Below, in pieces: positions 6,701 to 17,661 of a stretch of DNA of 64,000 bases. This DNA comes from Podarcis vaucheri. Taxonomy: Eukaryota. The translations under genes and the position numbers were made by a program. Position 1 is the first letter of the stretch, and every line of letters begins with the position of its first letter. Below the pieces are notes generated by a model, which ran no database searches, was not told the DNA's origin, and saw only the letters and a list, made by a program, of their open reading frames with translations. The stretch lies in the NCBI GenBank assembly GCA_965113315.1, contig OZ220378.1; one strand, 5' to 3'.

Positions 6701-9700
6701 TGTGGGTTTATTTATTTACTATCCCACACTCTGTCACCAGACTACGTGGATACAGTCATACCTCGGGTTGAATGCGCTTTGGGTTGAGCGCGTTAGAGTT
6801 GCACTCCGTGGCAACCCAGAAGTAACGGAGCGTGTTACTTTCGGATTTTGCCATTTGAGCTTGCGCAGACGCTCAAAATGACGTCACACGCATGCGCAGA
6901 AGTGCCATCACTAGATATGTTTGCTTCTGGATGCGAACGGGGCTCCGGAACGGATCCCGTTCATATCTAGAGGTACCACTGTATTCCAAAAGTCACCTAC
7001 ATTCTAAATGGCTATCAGCTAAACCCCCAATCCTTCCCATTACACCTCCTCACAGAAATATGTGCTTAACCAGATATGCAGAAGGAAATCTTTTACCCAA
7101 CAGCCTACACCTTAATGATTCATGCCCCTGAATGATTCATTGTGCCTGGGGAGAAAAGGTGAGTCCATGTATCAATTACACACACGGACACCCATCTCGC
7201 AAATGATGTAAGTCCAGGTATCAACATCATAGTGCCTTGCAATCTTCTCCTGGCCCCCACAAAGCCCCTCCCCGCACTACCCACTTGGTCATGAGGCCAC
7301 AAGGGTGGCCAGTTTTTTCTCCCTTTAAAGATACATACAGGCAGCACCCCCAACCCCCCGTTTAGGCACGTTCCATATGTGTGCAACCGTGTACATGTGC
7401 CTTGCGCCAAACCCAGAAGTGACCCAGAACCATCATAAAGACGTCACTGAAATGTCACTAAAAGGGCAGAGCAGGGTGTTTGCAGGCTTTTTCAATGGGT
7501 TTCAATTATACAGAATTTCACTGGCGCGCGCAGTACCTCAGAACGTAAACCCCGTGTAAATGGGGGGAGGGGCTCCTTGAAGAGGAGGAGGAAGTTGGAA
7601 AAGTGGCGCTCTTTCCCATTTTCTCTTCCAACTCTATGTGCTTTTCAAGCCTCAGATTAATATTATCGGGTCGACTTTTATCCAGATCCCTTGGAAAGGC
7701 AATGAGTGCGTATGTATGAACTCTGACAGGAAGGTTGATCCAGAGGACAGAGAGAGAAGCAACCAGGCTCGGTGGCGCCCACAGCACACAGTCGTAAATC
7801 GCCACAGACCAAAGAATGGTTGGCAGCTCCAGATTAAGGAATTCTAAATGGCTCTGAAGCTACTTGCATTTGCTCAGTTGCACTGATAGGATTCCAACCT
7901 GGATGGAGCATTACAGTGTGGAGGCTATTTGCCGCCTGAAGGAGAATTCTGTGGAAGTAGGTAGGCCGGTACAAGAGTTATCTTATCCGTTCTGGTTGCT
8001 GCTGGCTTTTACAATCAATATCACTGAAGGAAAAGCTTGGCTTGTCAACAGTATGCAAAGGTTTGGGGCCCTGCCTTCTTGACTGTATTTTCTGCTTTTA
8101 ACGCTTCAGACAGACTACCCAGACCTGACTTACCAGCCAGGCGACACTCTTGCTTCACCAGTCTCTTCCTGTTTGCCCAGGGCTGGCTCCAGACCTCAAA
8201 GTGACATGACTGGAAGGGAAGAACAGAAAAGGTTAGGAGGGCAATCAAGGAGAAGCCACTCAGATAAGATGCGTGAGGCGGAAGGATGCAAGGCTGGAAA
8301 TCAGAAATATTGCCTTGCCATCAACTCTAGGAGAGGAAATGGGGCCTACTGGGCTATCTGAGGAGGCAAAAGGAAGTCAGGACCTCTGGCTCTGGCAGGA
8401 AAGGGCTGCCCTCCTCCCAAAAGATTGAAGGTTCAATCCCCATAAGGGGCAGCTGCATATTCCTGTATTGCAGGGGTTTGGACTAGATGATCCACAGGGT
8501 CTCCTTCCAACTCTTATGATTCTATGACCTAGTGGTCTATGACTCCAAACAGTAAGGTGCCTTGGGGCGTTCATCTTGCACCATGCACCAGAGATGCTTT
8601 ATCCCTACCAGCCACTTCACTGGGAGGACCTTTTGCATCTTAATTGAGGCTGATCTCATGAAAATACAGTGGTACCTTGGGTTAAGTACTTAATTTGTTC
8701 CGGAGGTCCGTTCTTAACCTGAAACTGTTCTTAACCTGAAGCACCACTTTAGCTAATGGGGCCTCCTGCTGCTGCTGCTGTGCCGCCGGAGCCCAATTTC
8801 TGTTCTTATCCTGAAGCAAAGTTCTTAAACTGAAGCACTATTTCTGGGTTAGCGGAGTGTGTAACCTGAAGCGTATGTAACCTGAAGCGTATGTAACCCG
8901 AGGTAACACTGTAAGTCCTAGCAAGAGGGTCAGTGTGTGTACTTGTCAGATATCTTGCACTGAGGGCTAGTTGCGCCTGGGTTGCAACCACTTCAGTCTT
9001 CAGCTTGGGGGATCGAGGACACCATAAGCATCTCAGAAGAGCATGCCTGCTGGATCAAACCCATCTTACGTAGCTCAGAGGTAGAGAATCTGCCTTGCAT
9101 GCAGAACCACCCAGGTTCAATCTCCAGGTAAGGCTAGGATAAACTTTTGGATAAAGCAACTGTGCCAGTCAGTATACATGATGTCAATGCTCTCTATCTT
9201 CCTCCTCGGCACCCAACCCCTGAAGCTACATGAGGCACTGTCAGCTGACAGGCTGGCCAGCCAAACCAAACTGCTCTTATTTGAGGGGACGTTTATGCAA
9301 AGAGATTCAGTGATGCCAGGTCACAAGATAAACATGTGAGACCCAGGGGGGACAAACTGAATTTGGCATGTGCTTATGGAGATCGTAGCCTTGATAATGA
9401 GAAGTCTGAGTCAACAGTACCAATGTTTACTGTTGTTAACACGCTGCTTTATGCAGACCAAAGCAAATCTAACCTTCCCAAGCTTCTGGGTGATGACCTG
9501 CTACTTCCCCATTCATCTCCTGGACATCTAACTTGCCCCCATTTCTCCAACACGTTGGAAGGAGGAGACCATATTTGCACAAACTACTTTGCGCCAGCCA
9601 CAGGTCCCAGTGGGAGGTCTGCTCCTCTTCAAGCAAAGAGGTGTCTGTTTGGAGATGGGAGAGTTAGAAATCCCACTTCACTGCCATCTGCATATCCACA

Positions 9701-16629: not shown

Positions 16630-17661
16630 TCACAAGAAAGCATCACACCATTCCTTCAGGCAGCCATAACAGTCTCTGGATTGCTTGGCATTGGCGCCGC
16701 ACGTGTCCTTCAACCACTCGCGGAAGAGGTCCTCGTCCTTCTTCAGCACTAAGAACTGTCCCAGAACCACGTATGCCTGTGTTCAAGAAAGCGGAGGGGG
16801 GGGGGCACACAGAGGATTAGCAACTTGGGTAAAAAAAAAAAAGAGAGGCTACCTATATCAGACTCTTTTGGGAGACTGAAAATTCCAGAATACCCTTCCG
16901 CGACCAGGTGCCCTCCAGAGGCTTTGGACTACAGCTGCCTCAGTTTGATGGGAGTTGTAACCCAAACTATCTTGAGGGCTCAGGGTTGTGAAACGCTATT
17001 CTAGAAGCACAGAAAATCTGGGAACACAGAAGTTATCCTTTCAGTGCAGCAGTTTGAGTTTTGGACTCAAGACTTGGGTTCAAGTCCTCATAGATAAACA
17101 ACTACCTGACATTCAGAAGACATCTTAAGGCAGCCCTGTTCAGGGAAGTTTTTAATGTATGACATATTAGTGTATTTTTGGTCTCTGTGGAAGCTGCCCA
17201 GAGTGGCTGGGGAAGCCCAGCCAGATGGGCGGGGTACAAATAATAAATAATAATATTATTATTATTACTCACTCTACCACAAAGACTAATTGGACGCAGG
17301 CCTACTGAGATTCAAAAAGACTGCTGCATTGCATAGGCCCTGAAAAGCAGGCTGCAGCAGTCATCAAAATGGAGCATGTCTCTCCTGATCTTGTAGTCCT
17401 GCGGGTAATCCTGGTACCTCTGAAGTGAACCCCCCACAGCAGAGGTTTATCTGGAGGCTAGAAAGCATCACTCTGCCCAAGTTCATTTCCTATTCCATTA
17501 ACTTATTTTGCTTTCAGACCCACTGTCCCAGAAGATACCTTGTCAAAGCCTTTGTCTTCCAGCTTCCTGCCAAGTACATCTCCAATGCCAGCTAAAGTAC
17601 CAACAGACTTGTCCCCCATGGGCTCAGCCACGAAGTCCCGATGCTTCTGACTGGTGGTCAT
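16630..17661 (-). CDS. BANF1: Barrier-to-autointegration factor, complete 89 aa
   Basis: complement(join(17539..17661,16630..16776)): [41 protein letters not shown]|[48 protein letters not shown]; near-identical to vertebrate BAF; exon 2 acceptor at 17678. Confidence 0.98.

What the first reader, a model, noticed from the sequence alone, without database searches (positions are those of the whole stretch)
8134..17661. A cystatin-E/M-like module fused to cathepsin F occupies the CST6 position next to BANF1: possible common origin of CST6 and the CTSF prodomain
Seen: about 2.7 kb downstream of the BANF1 stop, on the same strand, three exons encode a signal peptide plus a full type-2 cystatin that splices in frame into cathepsin F. 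Established (recalled): in human 11q13 the gene immediately downstream of BANF1, same strand, is CST6 (cystatin E/M), while CTSF lies several hundred kb away with a degenerate cystatin-like domain. The lizard module resembles CST6 ([13 protein letters not shown] vs AQSQLVAGIKYFL; [22 protein letters not shown] vs [22 protein letters not shown]), and its 41-codon middle exon is close to CST6's long exon 2. It also keeps a CTSF-like helix ([10 protein letters not shown] vs human CTSF PTRFALEMF). Inference: mammalian CST6 may be the 5' three exons of an ancestral BANF1-linked CTSF left behind after duplication or relocation. Alternatively, squamates fused a CST6 to CTSF.
Basis: partly seen in the sequence, partly recalled or inferred. 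Interest (0 to 1): 0.85.

Follow-up and report, generated by a model that had tools for sequence, protein, structure and literature searches.

The report
Lizard cathepsin F beside BANF1
This is the ordinary cathepsin F gene of a wall lizard, whose first three exons encode the cystatin-type domain that cathepsin F carries in most animals; it does sit directly after BANF1, but the idea that mammalian cystatin E/M (CST6) descends from it could not be tested decisively and gained no specific support.

Summary
On the minus strand, BANF1 ends at 16630. About 2.7 kb downstream, three exons (13938-13732, 10648-10526, 8209-8134) encode a signal peptide plus a cystatin domain with QVVNG, PW and four Cys. 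These exons splice in frame into cathepsin F.

The gene is already annotated. RefSeq cathepsin F proteins of five lacertids match these exons at 93-100% and carry the same exon 3/4 join.

The cystatin-protease fusion is not a squamate event. Cathepsin F of turtles, amphibians, ray-finned fishes and several invertebrate-like proteins (one named, a nematode) has a Pfam Cystatin domain in the same place. Only marsupials and eutherians have lost both QxVxG and PW.

The resemblance to CST6 is generic type-2 cystatin resemblance. Among solved cystatins, the best match changes with the query: cystatin M for frog, chicken cystatin for Anolis, paddlefish and a profile containing Podarcis.

New support for an old link between CTSF and this neighbourhood: two teleost gene models read through from CTSF into EIF1AD.

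Against a mammalian origin of CST6: squamates are reported to express separate cystatin-E/M transcripts.

A tree including CST6, cross-species microsynteny and RNA reads could not be obtained, so the origin hypothesis stays open. I give it about 0.13.

The parts
17539..17661 (-). BANF1 coding exon 1 (Met1-Lys41), donor GT
   Evidence: Translation and donor; Pfam SAM_BAF positions 1-42, E 1.6e-17
16630..16776 (-). BANF1 coding exon 2 (48 codons plus stop), acceptor CAG
   Evidence: Pfam SAM_BAF positions 45-88, E 1.4e-20
13939..16629 (-). BANF1-CTSF intergenic spacer, 2,691 bp. The part next to the CTSF start is GC-rich (13.5-14.5 kb, GC 0.62-0.67, CpG o/e 0.44-0.69) and is the presumed CTSF promoter.
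   Evidence: No cystatin-like exon is present here.
13732..13938 (-). CTSF exon 1: ATG, signal peptide, N-terminal Gly-Gly, cystatin helix (AARFALAE), up to the Gln of QVVNG; phase 0
   Evidence: 100% identical to residues 1-70 of P. muralis cathepsin F
10526..10648 (-). CTSF exon 2: 41 codons, VVNGIKYYL hairpin loop 1 and the first Cys pair; phase 0
   Evidence: 97.6% identical to lacertid CTSF residues 69-110
8134..8209 (-). CTSF exon 3: [10 protein letters not shown]...KQEC, PW loop and second Cys pair; ends in phase 1 with no stop codon
   Evidence: the only C..PW..C motif in the window
6573..6682 (-). CTSF exon 4: linker between the cystatin domain and the I29 propeptide; completes the split Glu codon
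   Evidence: 100% identical to lacertid CTSF residues 134-172
5430..5505 (-). CTSF exon 5: start of the I29 propeptide ([13 protein letters not shown]...)
4436..4549 (-). CTSF exon 6: I29 propeptide with the ERFNAQ-type motif (E-x3-R-x3-F-x2-N-x3-A-x3-Q)
   Evidence: Pfam Inhibitor_I29, E 1.9e-6; sequence
3381..3526 (-). CTSF exon 7: end of the propeptide and start of the mature enzyme ([14 protein letters not shown])
2209..2305 (-). CTSF exon 8: active-site Cys ([10 protein letters not shown])
   Evidence: Pfam Peptidase_C1, E 1.8e-10
1711..1792 (-). CTSF exon 9
   Evidence: Pfam Peptidase_C1, E 1.5e-4
591..710 (-). CTSF exon 10, the last one in the window. About 96 codons, including the catalytic His and Asn, lie beyond the window start.

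Best explanation
The stretch holds the 3' end of BANF1 and, 2.7 kb downstream on the same strand, the first ten exons of the orthologue of cathepsin F (CTSF) in a Podarcis-type lacertid lizard.

Exons 1-3 encode the signal peptide and the N-terminal cystatin domain. This domain is a native, ancient part of the CTSF zymogen, whose layout is signal, cystatin domain, linker, I29 propeptide, papain-type protease. It is not a captured CST6.

Shown here: the exon structure, the reading frame, the cystatin fold, the retained inhibitory motifs, and orthology to annotated CTSF.

Inferred: the protein enters the secretory/lysosomal route. The I29 propeptide blocks the active site until the long proregion is cut off. 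In non-mammals the released or still-attached cystatin domain probably still binds papain-type proteases, because the Gly, QxVxG, PW and both disulfides are kept under constraint across sauropsids, amphibians and fishes. In mammals the domain has lost these motifs.

The position next to BANF1 reflects an old linkage of CTSF to the EIF1AD/BANF1 neighbourhood that was rearranged in mammals. It does not by itself say where CST6 came from.
For: Splice sites and phases. Pfam I29 and Peptidase_C1 on the later exons. Best relatives in 1.84 billion representatives are cathepsin F of Python, Anolis, frog, paddlefish and grouper. Five lacertid RefSeq cathepsin F proteins match exon by exon at 93-100% with the same exon 3/4 join. 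Pfam Cystatin scores within CTSF: Podarcis 22.5 bits (cut-off 22.2), Anolis 26.8, turtle 27.3, frog 39.0, paddlefish 41.2, grouper 45.6, and 46-60 bits in three unnamed long cathepsin F-like proteins that I take for invertebrate, plus 30 bits in the nematode Trichuris. The AlphaFold model of the Anolis N-terminal part gives a helix plus four long strands at pLDDT 79-95. Its best Foldseek matches are all type-2 cystatins at probability 1.00. QxVxG, PW and four Cys are kept in 15 squamates (one or two Cys fewer in two of them), 2 turtles, 6 of 8 amphibians and 7 fishes, and both motifs are lost in 3 marsupials and 2 eutherians. The domain is 58% identical among squamates and 62% between Podarcis and turtles. 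A cystatin-like domain in human cathepsin F was already described by Nagler et al. 1999, cited in PMC11171618. Two teleost models fuse CTSF to EIF1AD.
Against: No transcript evidence from this species could be obtained; the join rests on splice logic and on RefSeq models of close relatives. Taken one exon at a time, the cystatin exons give no Pfam or PDB hit. The cystatin assignment therefore rests on the near-identical full-length database proteins, not on a joined model of the window. The sauropsid domain is only 23-27% identical to amphibian and fish CTSF domains. By similarity alone its orthology to them is no clearer than its likeness to free cystatins. Inhibitory activity is untested.
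Confidence: 0.9

Rival explanations
1. One reading: CST6 is a partial duplicate, made of the three 5' exons, of a CTSF that sat directly after BANF1. One copy stayed beside BANF1 as a free cystatin, and the complete gene ended up about 0.5 Mb away. A staggered-break inversion could do this. It would also explain why human CST6 has BANF1's strand and CTSF the opposite one (human positions are from my own knowledge).
For: In the lizard, CTSF holds exactly the place and strand that CST6 holds in human. CTSF is also next to EIF1AD in two teleosts, so this neighbourhood is its old home. CST6 is the type-2 cystatin gene at 11q13, away from CST3 at 20p11.2, and it has three exons (PMC8070812). The frog CTSF domain and a fish+lizard+frog profile score cystatin M highest among solved cystatins (65.5 and 94.2 bits). 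Mammals alone lost QxVxG and PW in CTSF. Kordis and Turk 2009 never considered cathepsin F, and their only non-mammalian 'E/M' entries are one skate EST and one Anolis gene prediction.
Against: The lead of cystatin M is 4-7 bits. It vanishes or reverses for Anolis, for paddlefish and for a profile with Podarcis. Foldseek does not separate E/M from C, F, D or chicken cystatin. CST6's extra loop residues are an insertion relative to the CTSF profile. The long exon 2 of Podarcis is not shared by Anolis. Hargreaves et al. report cystatin-e/m transcripts in all tissues of five squamates (bioRxiv 10.1101/006031), so a free E/M-type gene seems to coexist with an intact CTSF domain in squamates. That breaks both the 'mammalian novelty' timing and the complementarity argument. 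From my own knowledge, not checked here: 11q13 and 20p12-p11 share several paralogue pairs (BANF1/BANF2, PYGM/PYGB, FLRT1/FLRT3, MACROD1/MACROD2, PLCB3/PLCB1,4). This would make CST6 a whole-genome-duplication sister of the CST3/CST7 group.
Confidence: 0.13
2. Domain replacement: in the sauropsid or amniote stem, the original CTSF cystatin exons were overwritten, by gene conversion or exon capture, with those of a neighbouring CST6-like gene.
For: The sauropsid domain is only 23-27% identical to amphibian and fish CTSF domains, while the rest of the protein is 64-80% identical. Its phmmer scores to those domains (17-42 bits) are no higher than its scores to chicken cystatin (35 bits for Anolis).
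Against: The turtle domain scores 36-40 bits against mammalian CTSF N-termini, and sauropsid and mammalian CTSF share the ARFAL helix motif, which fits vertical descent. The exon layout is unchanged. Cystatin M is not the best match of any sauropsid-containing query. Fast evolution of a small domain explains the numbers equally well.
Confidence: 0.04
3. Two genes: exons 1-3 form a free cystatin gene and CTSF starts at a downstream exon. On this view the join is an annotation artefact.
For: No RNA reads could be laid on the junction. Reading on past exon 3 gives a stop after about 28 further codons (ORF 8045-8248), so an unspliced product is conceivable.
Against: Exon 3 ends in phase 1 at a strong GTAAGT donor, and exon 4 opens with the matching two bases behind a pyrimidine tract and CAG. 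The linker exon has no start codon or signal peptide of its own. CTSF models from more than 100 vertebrate species, several from transcript assemblies, carry the same domain order.
Confidence: 0.03

Closest known systems
Vertebrate cathepsin F (CTSF) zymogen with its N-terminal cystatin-like domain (Nagler, Sulea and Menard 1999; RefSeq cathepsin F of Podarcis muralis XP_028565443.2 and relatives)
   Same: Same gene. It has the same exon order, signal peptide, cystatin domain, linker, I29 with ERFNAQ motif, and papain-type domain with CGSCWAFS. Identity to lacertid proteins is 93-100%.
   Different: Compared with the mammalian protein in which the domain was first described, the lizard keeps QVVNG, PW and a clear Pfam Cystatin match. 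Marsupial and eutherian CTSF have lost them. The gene lies directly after BANF1 instead of roughly 0.5 Mb away as in human (human distance from my own knowledge).
Cystatin E/M (CST6, human structures 4N6L/4N6M)
   Same: Type-2 cystatin fold, signal peptide, QxVxG hairpin followed by GIKY, PW loop, four Cys, three coding exons. Human CST6 holds the same place after BANF1 (gene position from my own knowledge; 11q13 and three exons from PMC8070812).
   Different: CST6 is a free 149-residue protein. The lizard module has no stop and continues into a protease. About 23-24% identity in structural alignment with the Anolis module, no more than to other cystatins. The Asn of the legumain site (GSNSIYY in CST6) and the PWQNSS glycosylation site have no counterpart in the lizard. 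CST6's loop insertion is not shared by the CTSF profile.
Chicken egg-white cystatin and cystatin C (classical type-2 cystatins)
   Same: Best or near-best solved matches of the Anolis, paddlefish and Podarcis-containing queries (35, 83 and 76 bits). Chicken cystatin shows 29% identity in the Foldseek alignment.
   Different: These are free inhibitors encoded at another locus. The lizard module has a longer first disulfide loop and a divergent helix-strand connection.
Long cathepsin F-like proteins with one or more cystatin domains (nematode Trichuris, and unnamed 564-725-residue representatives that I take for invertebrate)
   Same: Cystatin domain(s) in front of I29 and the protease. This indicates that the fusion predates vertebrates.
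   Different: Often two or more cystatin domains and a longer proregion. Only the Trichuris entry carries a taxon name in my results.

Membership tests
Cathepsin F (papain family C1A, F-like group) | Papain-type catalytic domain with the active-site Cys in a CGSCWAFS context | tested here: met
   Exon 8 encodes [10 protein letters not shown]; Pfam Peptidase_C1 E 1.8e-10 and 1.5e-4 on exons 8 and 9. The catalytic His and Asn lie outside the window. They fall within the complete Peptidase_C1 match of the near-identical P. raffonei protein (233 bits).
Cathepsin F (papain family C1A, F-like group) | I29 propeptide with the ERFNAQ-type motif instead of ERFNIN | tested here: met
   Exon 5/6 reads [20 protein letters not shown], which fits E-x3-R-x3-F-x2-N-x3-A-x3-Q (sequence). 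Pfam Inhibitor_I29 28.5 bits.
Cathepsin F (papain family C1A, F-like group) | Long proregion with an N-terminal cystatin-type domain and a linker before I29 | tested here: met
   Exons 1-4. Pfam Cystatin at residues 23-121 of the 98%-identical P. raffonei protein. Cystatin fold in the Anolis model.
Cathepsin F (papain family C1A, F-like group) | Orthology: the nearest named proteins are cathepsin F rather than W, L, S and others | tested here: met
   Not tested against mammalian cathepsin W sequences, none of which were among the listed hits.
Type-2 cystatin (inhibitor family I25B) | Signal peptide, N-terminal Gly, QxVxG loop, PW loop, two disulfides | tested here: met
   [20 protein letters not shown]..., GG, QVVNG split by intron 1, PW, four Cys. 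The signal peptide was judged by eye only.
Type-2 cystatin (inhibitor family I25B) | Cystatin fold (helix packed on an antiparallel sheet) | tested here: met
   Model of the Anolis orthologue: helix 26-38, strands 48-58, 62-72, 92-103, 108-118, pLDDT 79-95. Top 20 Foldseek matches are all cystatins, E 2e-5 to 8e-4. The window's own joined product was not folded.
Type-2 cystatin (inhibitor family I25B) | Free secreted protein of about 120 residues | tested here: not met
   Exon 3 ends in phase 1 without a stop and splices into the protease.
Type-2 cystatin (inhibitor family I25B) | Tight-binding inhibition of papain-type proteases | not testable with these tools
   Needs recombinant protein and kinetics.
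Cystatin E/M (CST6) orthologue | Closer to CST6 than to other type-2 cystatins | tested here: not met
   Anolis: chicken 35 > C 28 > CST8 27 > M 23 bits. Profile with Podarcis: chicken 76 > M 69.5 > C 66. Only the frog and a frog-containing profile put M first, by 4-7 bits.
Cystatin E/M (CST6) orthologue | CST6 signatures: legumain-site Asn, PWQNSS glycosylation site, five-residue loop insertion | tested here: not met
   CST6 residues are printed; the insertion is stated in PMC8070812. The lizard has [11 protein letters not shown] at the legumain-site position and PWANRK at the glycosylation site. Its first disulfide loop is long in Podarcis (12 residues) but short in Anolis (9), so loop length is not a conserved character.
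Cystatin E/M (CST6) orthologue | Monophyly with mammalian CST6 in a tree of cystatin domains | not tested
   No free cystatin sequence could be obtained. The length window of the search for homologous proteins excludes proteins of about 150 residues for every query I had.

The most novel reading that the evidence does not exclude
CST6 and the CTSF cystatin exons are sister copies. A CTSF lying directly after BANF1 had its three 5' exons duplicated, either in tandem or at the staggered break of an inversion. The free copy became cystatin E/M and kept the BANF1-adjacent place, and CTSF was later moved away in mammals. If squamate cystatin-E/M is a true orthologue, this happened before the amniote split. 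It would explain why CST6 is the only type-2 cystatin gene outside the 20p11 cluster. It would also mean that some 'cystatin E/M' records of non-mammals (skate EST EE992410, Anolis scaffold_834.9) may really be CTSF 5' ends.
Probability: 0.13. Interest if true: 0.65.

Novelty: already known. Interest (0 to 1): 0.3.

Why it matters
As it stands, this is a correctly read, already annotated gene, and the cystatin domain of cathepsin F has been known since 1999.

Two side results are useful to specialists. First, the inhibitory motifs of that domain are kept in squamates, turtles, most amphibians and ray-finned fishes, and are lost only in marsupials and eutherians. Mammalian cathepsin F is therefore the odd one out, and the domain probably has a working role elsewhere. 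Second, CTSF belongs to the EIF1AD/BANF1 neighbourhood in both a lizard and teleosts.

If the CST6-from-CTSF idea were true, it would give a concrete origin for the one type-2 cystatin gene that lies outside the main cluster. It would also be a clean example of a protease prodomain set free as an inhibitor. Anyone with a genome browser and a tree program can test this quickly.

Tried and rejected
Exon-by-exon Pfam and PDB searches of the three cystatin exons gave nothing. The pieces are too short.

The near-identical database proteins P0283 and P0173 served as stand-ins.

The search for homologous proteins restricted to the cystatin region of frog or Anolis CTSF found only 8 and 3 close relatives. 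Free cystatins of about 150 residues fall outside the length window of every query available. I considered sending an alignment headed by a short ORF to get round this (alignments A1, A2). I dropped it as unlikely to work and too close to a joined model.

The protein-atlas search gave only generic cystatin clusters below 0.9.

Paper searches for CST6/BANF1/CTSF synteny, for 11q13-20p paralogy and for CST6 in squamates found nothing usable.

The search of earlier findings held only restatements of this same stretch; two further word look-ups failed.

A scan of the whole window for a second cystatin-like exon found none.

Rejected ideas:
- The 41-codon exon 2 marks CST6 affinity: exon length varies among lizards.
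- AARFALAE is CST6-like: it is the CTSF helix motif shared with mammals.
- The loss of CTSF motifs in mammals is explained by the presence of CST6: squamates appear to have both a free E/M-type cystatin and an intact CTSF domain.

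
Full report
WHAT IS THERE. The genes of interest are on the minus strand. BANF1 is complete in its coding part: exon 17661-17539 (41 codons, donor GT) and exon 16776-16630 (48 codons plus stop, acceptor CAG). 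Each half hits Pfam SAM_BAF at E 1.6e-17 and 1.4e-20. After 2,691 bases, an ATG at 13938 opens a 207-nt exon. It encodes a hydrophobic signal-like start, a Gly-Gly, a helix (AARFALAE), and ends on the Gln of QVVNG (donor GTGAGA). The second exon (10648-10526, 123 nt, 41 codons) begins VVNGIKYYL and holds two Cys. The third (8209-8134, 76 nt) reads [25 protein letters not shown] and ends in phase 1 at GTAAGT. Exon 4 (6682-6573) follows a pyrimidine tract and CAG, completes the split codon as Glu, and stays open. Six more exons (5505-5430, 4549-4436, 3526-3381, 2305-2209, 1792-1711, 710-591) carry the I29 propeptide with an ERFNAQ-type motif and the first part of a papain-type domain with [10 protein letters not shown] (Pfam; coordinates). 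The phases add up to 383 codons plus two bases. The window ends inside the gene, with about 96 codons missing.

WHICH GENE AND WHICH ANIMAL. A scan of 1.84 billion representative proteins with the ORF around exon 7 returned cathepsin F of Python, Anolis, Ascaphus, paddlefish and grouper as best hits. A search with gecko cathepsin F then listed 120 cathepsin F clusters. One of them holds RefSeq cathepsin F of Podarcis raffonei, P. muralis, P. lilfordi, Zootoca vivipara and Lacerta agilis. These 479-480-residue proteins align to the window exon by exon at 93-100%. Exon 1 is 100% identical to P. muralis and P. lilfordi. They contain the same ...KQECRLA|[10 protein letters not shown]... join across the 8134/6682 junction. 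The window therefore comes from a Podarcis-type lacertid, and the gene is already annotated as cathepsin F. In keeping with the operators' note, I did not build or search a joined model of the window. These database proteins stood in for it.

IS THE MODULE A CYSTATIN. Singly, the three exons are too short to hit anything. In the full-length proteins, Pfam Cystatin is found at residues 23-121 of the Podarcis protein (22.5 bits, cut-off 22.2). It scores 26.8 in Anolis, 27.3 in a turtle, 39.0 in a frog, 41.2 in paddlefish, 45.6 in grouper, 30 in the nematode Trichuris, and 46-60 in three unnamed long cathepsin F-like proteins that I take for invertebrate. It is not found in marsupial or eutherian cathepsin F. 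An AlphaFold model of the Anolis N-terminal 279 residues, built on 42 aligned sequences, gives a helix and four long strands at pLDDT 79-95. Its first twenty Foldseek matches in the PDB are all cystatins (CRES, E/M, F, C, D, chicken) at probability 1.00 and 20-29% identity. The fold and the motifs are those of a type-2 cystatin.

THE FUSION IS OLD. An alignment of 44 N-terminal regions and a motif table show QxVxG, PW and four Cys in squamates, turtles, frogs, Ambystoma, bichir, sturgeon, paddlefish and teleosts. Newts have lost PW. Marsupials read xMAxG and MW, and eutherians RAGxG with the PW site deleted. Cathepsin F with a cystatin-like domain was described for human in 1999 (Nagler et al., cited in PMC11171618). 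Within sauropsids the domain is under constraint: 58% identity among squamates and 62% between Podarcis and turtles, against 49% and 41% for the linker. Across classes it is fast: 23-27% to amphibians and fishes, against 76-80% for the catalytic domain.

IS IT CST6-LIKE. But the same positions are nearly as well matched by chicken cystatin (AKRQLVSGIKYIL; C.F.V.S.PW), as the same printout shows.

Bit scores by phmmer or hmmsearch against all PDB sequences:

| Query | M | F | chicken | C | D | CST8 |
|---|---|---|---|---|---|---|
| Frog CTSF N-terminus | 65.5 | 58.5 | 56.5 | 52.2 | - | - |
| Anolis | 23.1 | - | 35.3 | 28.4 | - | 27.0 |
| Paddlefish | 63.8 | 71.4 | 83.4 | 69.2 | - | - |
| Profile: paddlefish + Anolis + frog | 94.2 | 89.7 | 89.6 | 84.4 | - | - |
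| Same profile with Podarcis in place of frog | 69.5 | 55.7 | 76.4 | 66.3 | 59.8 | - |

The rank of cystatin M thus depends on which CTSF is asked.

CTSF domains of different vertebrate classes also score no better against each other than against free cystatins. Frog against fishes gives 50-58 bits, frog against sauropsids 20-42, and paddlefish against tetrapods 26-58. Similarity therefore cannot tell a special CST6 link from shared ancestry of all type-2 cystatins combined with unequal rates.

The other proposed shared characters fail as well. Exon 2 has about 37 residues in Anolis. CST6's extra loop residues are an insertion relative to the CTSF profile. The legumain-site Asn and the PWQNSS glycosylation site have no lizard counterpart. 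The ARFAL helix motif is shared by sauropsid and mammalian CTSF, which fits vertical descent of the domain.

POSITION. No second cystatin-like exon exists anywhere in the 64 kb, so CTSF is the direct downstream neighbour of BANF1. EIF1AD is not in the window. Upstream of BANF1 lies a CpG-rich patch with the only N run (22464-22593). From about 40 kb on the plus strand there is an integrin alpha gene with VWA and FG-GAP domains.

Two teleost gene models are complete cathepsin F proteins that run on into a complete EIF1AD (Pfam eIF-1a at 544-606 and 507-568). They are RefSeq XP_062281278.1 of Scomber scombrus (695 residues) and KAL0973891.1 of Umbra pygmaea (658 residues). Such read-through models arise only from same-strand neighbours. 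So ctsf and eif1ad are adjacent in two distant teleost orders.

From my own knowledge, not checked here: EIF1AD is BANF1's head-to-head neighbour in human, followed by CST6 on BANF1's strand, with CTSF about 0.5 Mb further on the other strand. Taken together, CTSF looks like an old resident of this neighbourhood that was displaced in mammals.

LITERATURE. CST6 lies at 11q13 with three exons, while CST3 lies at 20p11.2 (PMC8070812). The main phylogenomic study of cystatins dates cystatin E/M to the ancestor of jawed vertebrates, with losses in teleosts, amphibians and birds (Kordis and Turk 2009, PMC2784779). It never mentions cathepsin F. Its non-mammalian E/M entries are one skate EST and one Anolis gene prediction. 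Whether these are free cystatins or CTSF 5' ends I could not check. Hargreaves et al. (bioRxiv 10.1101/006031) report cystatin-e/m transcripts in all tissues of four snakes and a gecko. These correspond to the classical small snake-venom-gland cystatins. If they are true CST6 orthologues, a free E/M gene coexists with an intact CTSF cystatin domain in squamates. That rules out an origin of CST6 within mammals, and it removes the tidy complementarity of 'CST6 present, CTSF domain decayed'.

A further rival rests only on my memory. 11q13 and 20p12-p11 share several paralogue pairs (BANF1/BANF2, PYGM/PYGB, FLRT1/FLRT3, MACROD1/MACROD2, PLCB3/PLCB1,4). That would make CST6 the genome-duplication sister of the CST3/CST7 group, lying beside BANF1 for that reason.

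HOW IT MOST LIKELY WORKS. Shown: a secretory-type N-terminus, a cystatin fold with intact contact motifs, a linker, an I29 propeptide and a papain-type enzyme in one reading frame. Inferred from what is established for papain-family zymogens: I29 lies in the active-site cleft until the proregion is removed at acid pH. The cystatin domain therefore cannot be the primary intramolecular lock. The conservation of Gly, QxVxG, PW and both disulfides across some 400 million years outside mammals suggests that it binds a papain-type protease in trans, either while still attached or after release. The target may be another cathepsin, possibly mature cathepsin F itself. I put this at about 0.6. A folding or sorting role is the main alternative.

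WHAT COULD NOT BE DONE. The search tool admits only proteins of 0.55-1.75 times the query length, and no query of suitable length existed. These are the decisive tests, and they are listed under next steps.

VERDICT. The object is the known cathepsin F gene with its native cystatin domain. The squamate-fusion alternative is refuted. CST6-specific resemblance was tested and not found. The CST6-from-CTSF hypothesis is neither supported nor excluded, at about 0.13.

Noticed in passing
P0139 (Scomber scombrus XP_062281278.1, 695 aa) and P0270 (Umbra pygmaea KAL0973891.1, 658 aa): Both gene models are a complete cathepsin F followed by a complete EIF1AD (eIF-1a domain). This means ctsf and eif1ad are same-strand neighbours in two distant teleosts, which gives indirect synteny evidence that CTSF is an old member of the EIF1AD/BANF1 neighbourhood.
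   Followed up: partly
CTSF proteins of 37 vertebrates: QxVxG, PW and four Cys of the CTSF cystatin domain are kept in squamates, turtles, frogs, Ambystoma and ray-finned fishes. Newts (Lissotriton, Pleurodeles) lost PW. Marsupials and eutherians lost both motifs. No bird cathepsin F appeared among the best 120 clusters.
   Followed up: partly
P0147 / P0015 (Protopterus annectens, named 'cathepsin W isoform X1/X2'): The lungfish protein named cathepsin W is 476 residues long, with a long N-terminal region where CTSF has its cystatin domain. It has no Pfam Cystatin hit and no QxVxG. It may be a CTSF/CTSW-type paralogue that still carries a decayed cystatin region.
   Followed up: no
In this lizard BANF1's upstream side thus differs from the human order, and no EIF1AD is present in the window.
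   Followed up: partly
window 22000-22600: A CpG-rich patch (GC 0.62, CpG o/e 0.87) containing the only N run (22464-22593). It lies about 4.5 kb upstream of the BANF1 start codon and may be the BANF1 promoter and a non-coding first exon. The N run was left untouched.
   Followed up: no
Kordis and Turk 2009, Additional file 2 (PMC2784779): The only non-mammalian 'cystatin E/M' records are skate EST EE992410 and the Anolis prediction scaffold_834.9, and the paper never mentions cathepsin F. These records might be 5' parts of CTSF, which would change the accepted age of CST6.
   Followed up: no
window 5045-5200 (-), 49386-49724 (+), 63395-63709 (-): Near-identical ORF fragments (for example ...[19 protein letters not shown]...[28 protein letters not shown]...) recur on both strands. 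They are copies of an interspersed repeat, one of them inside a CTSF intron.
   Followed up: no
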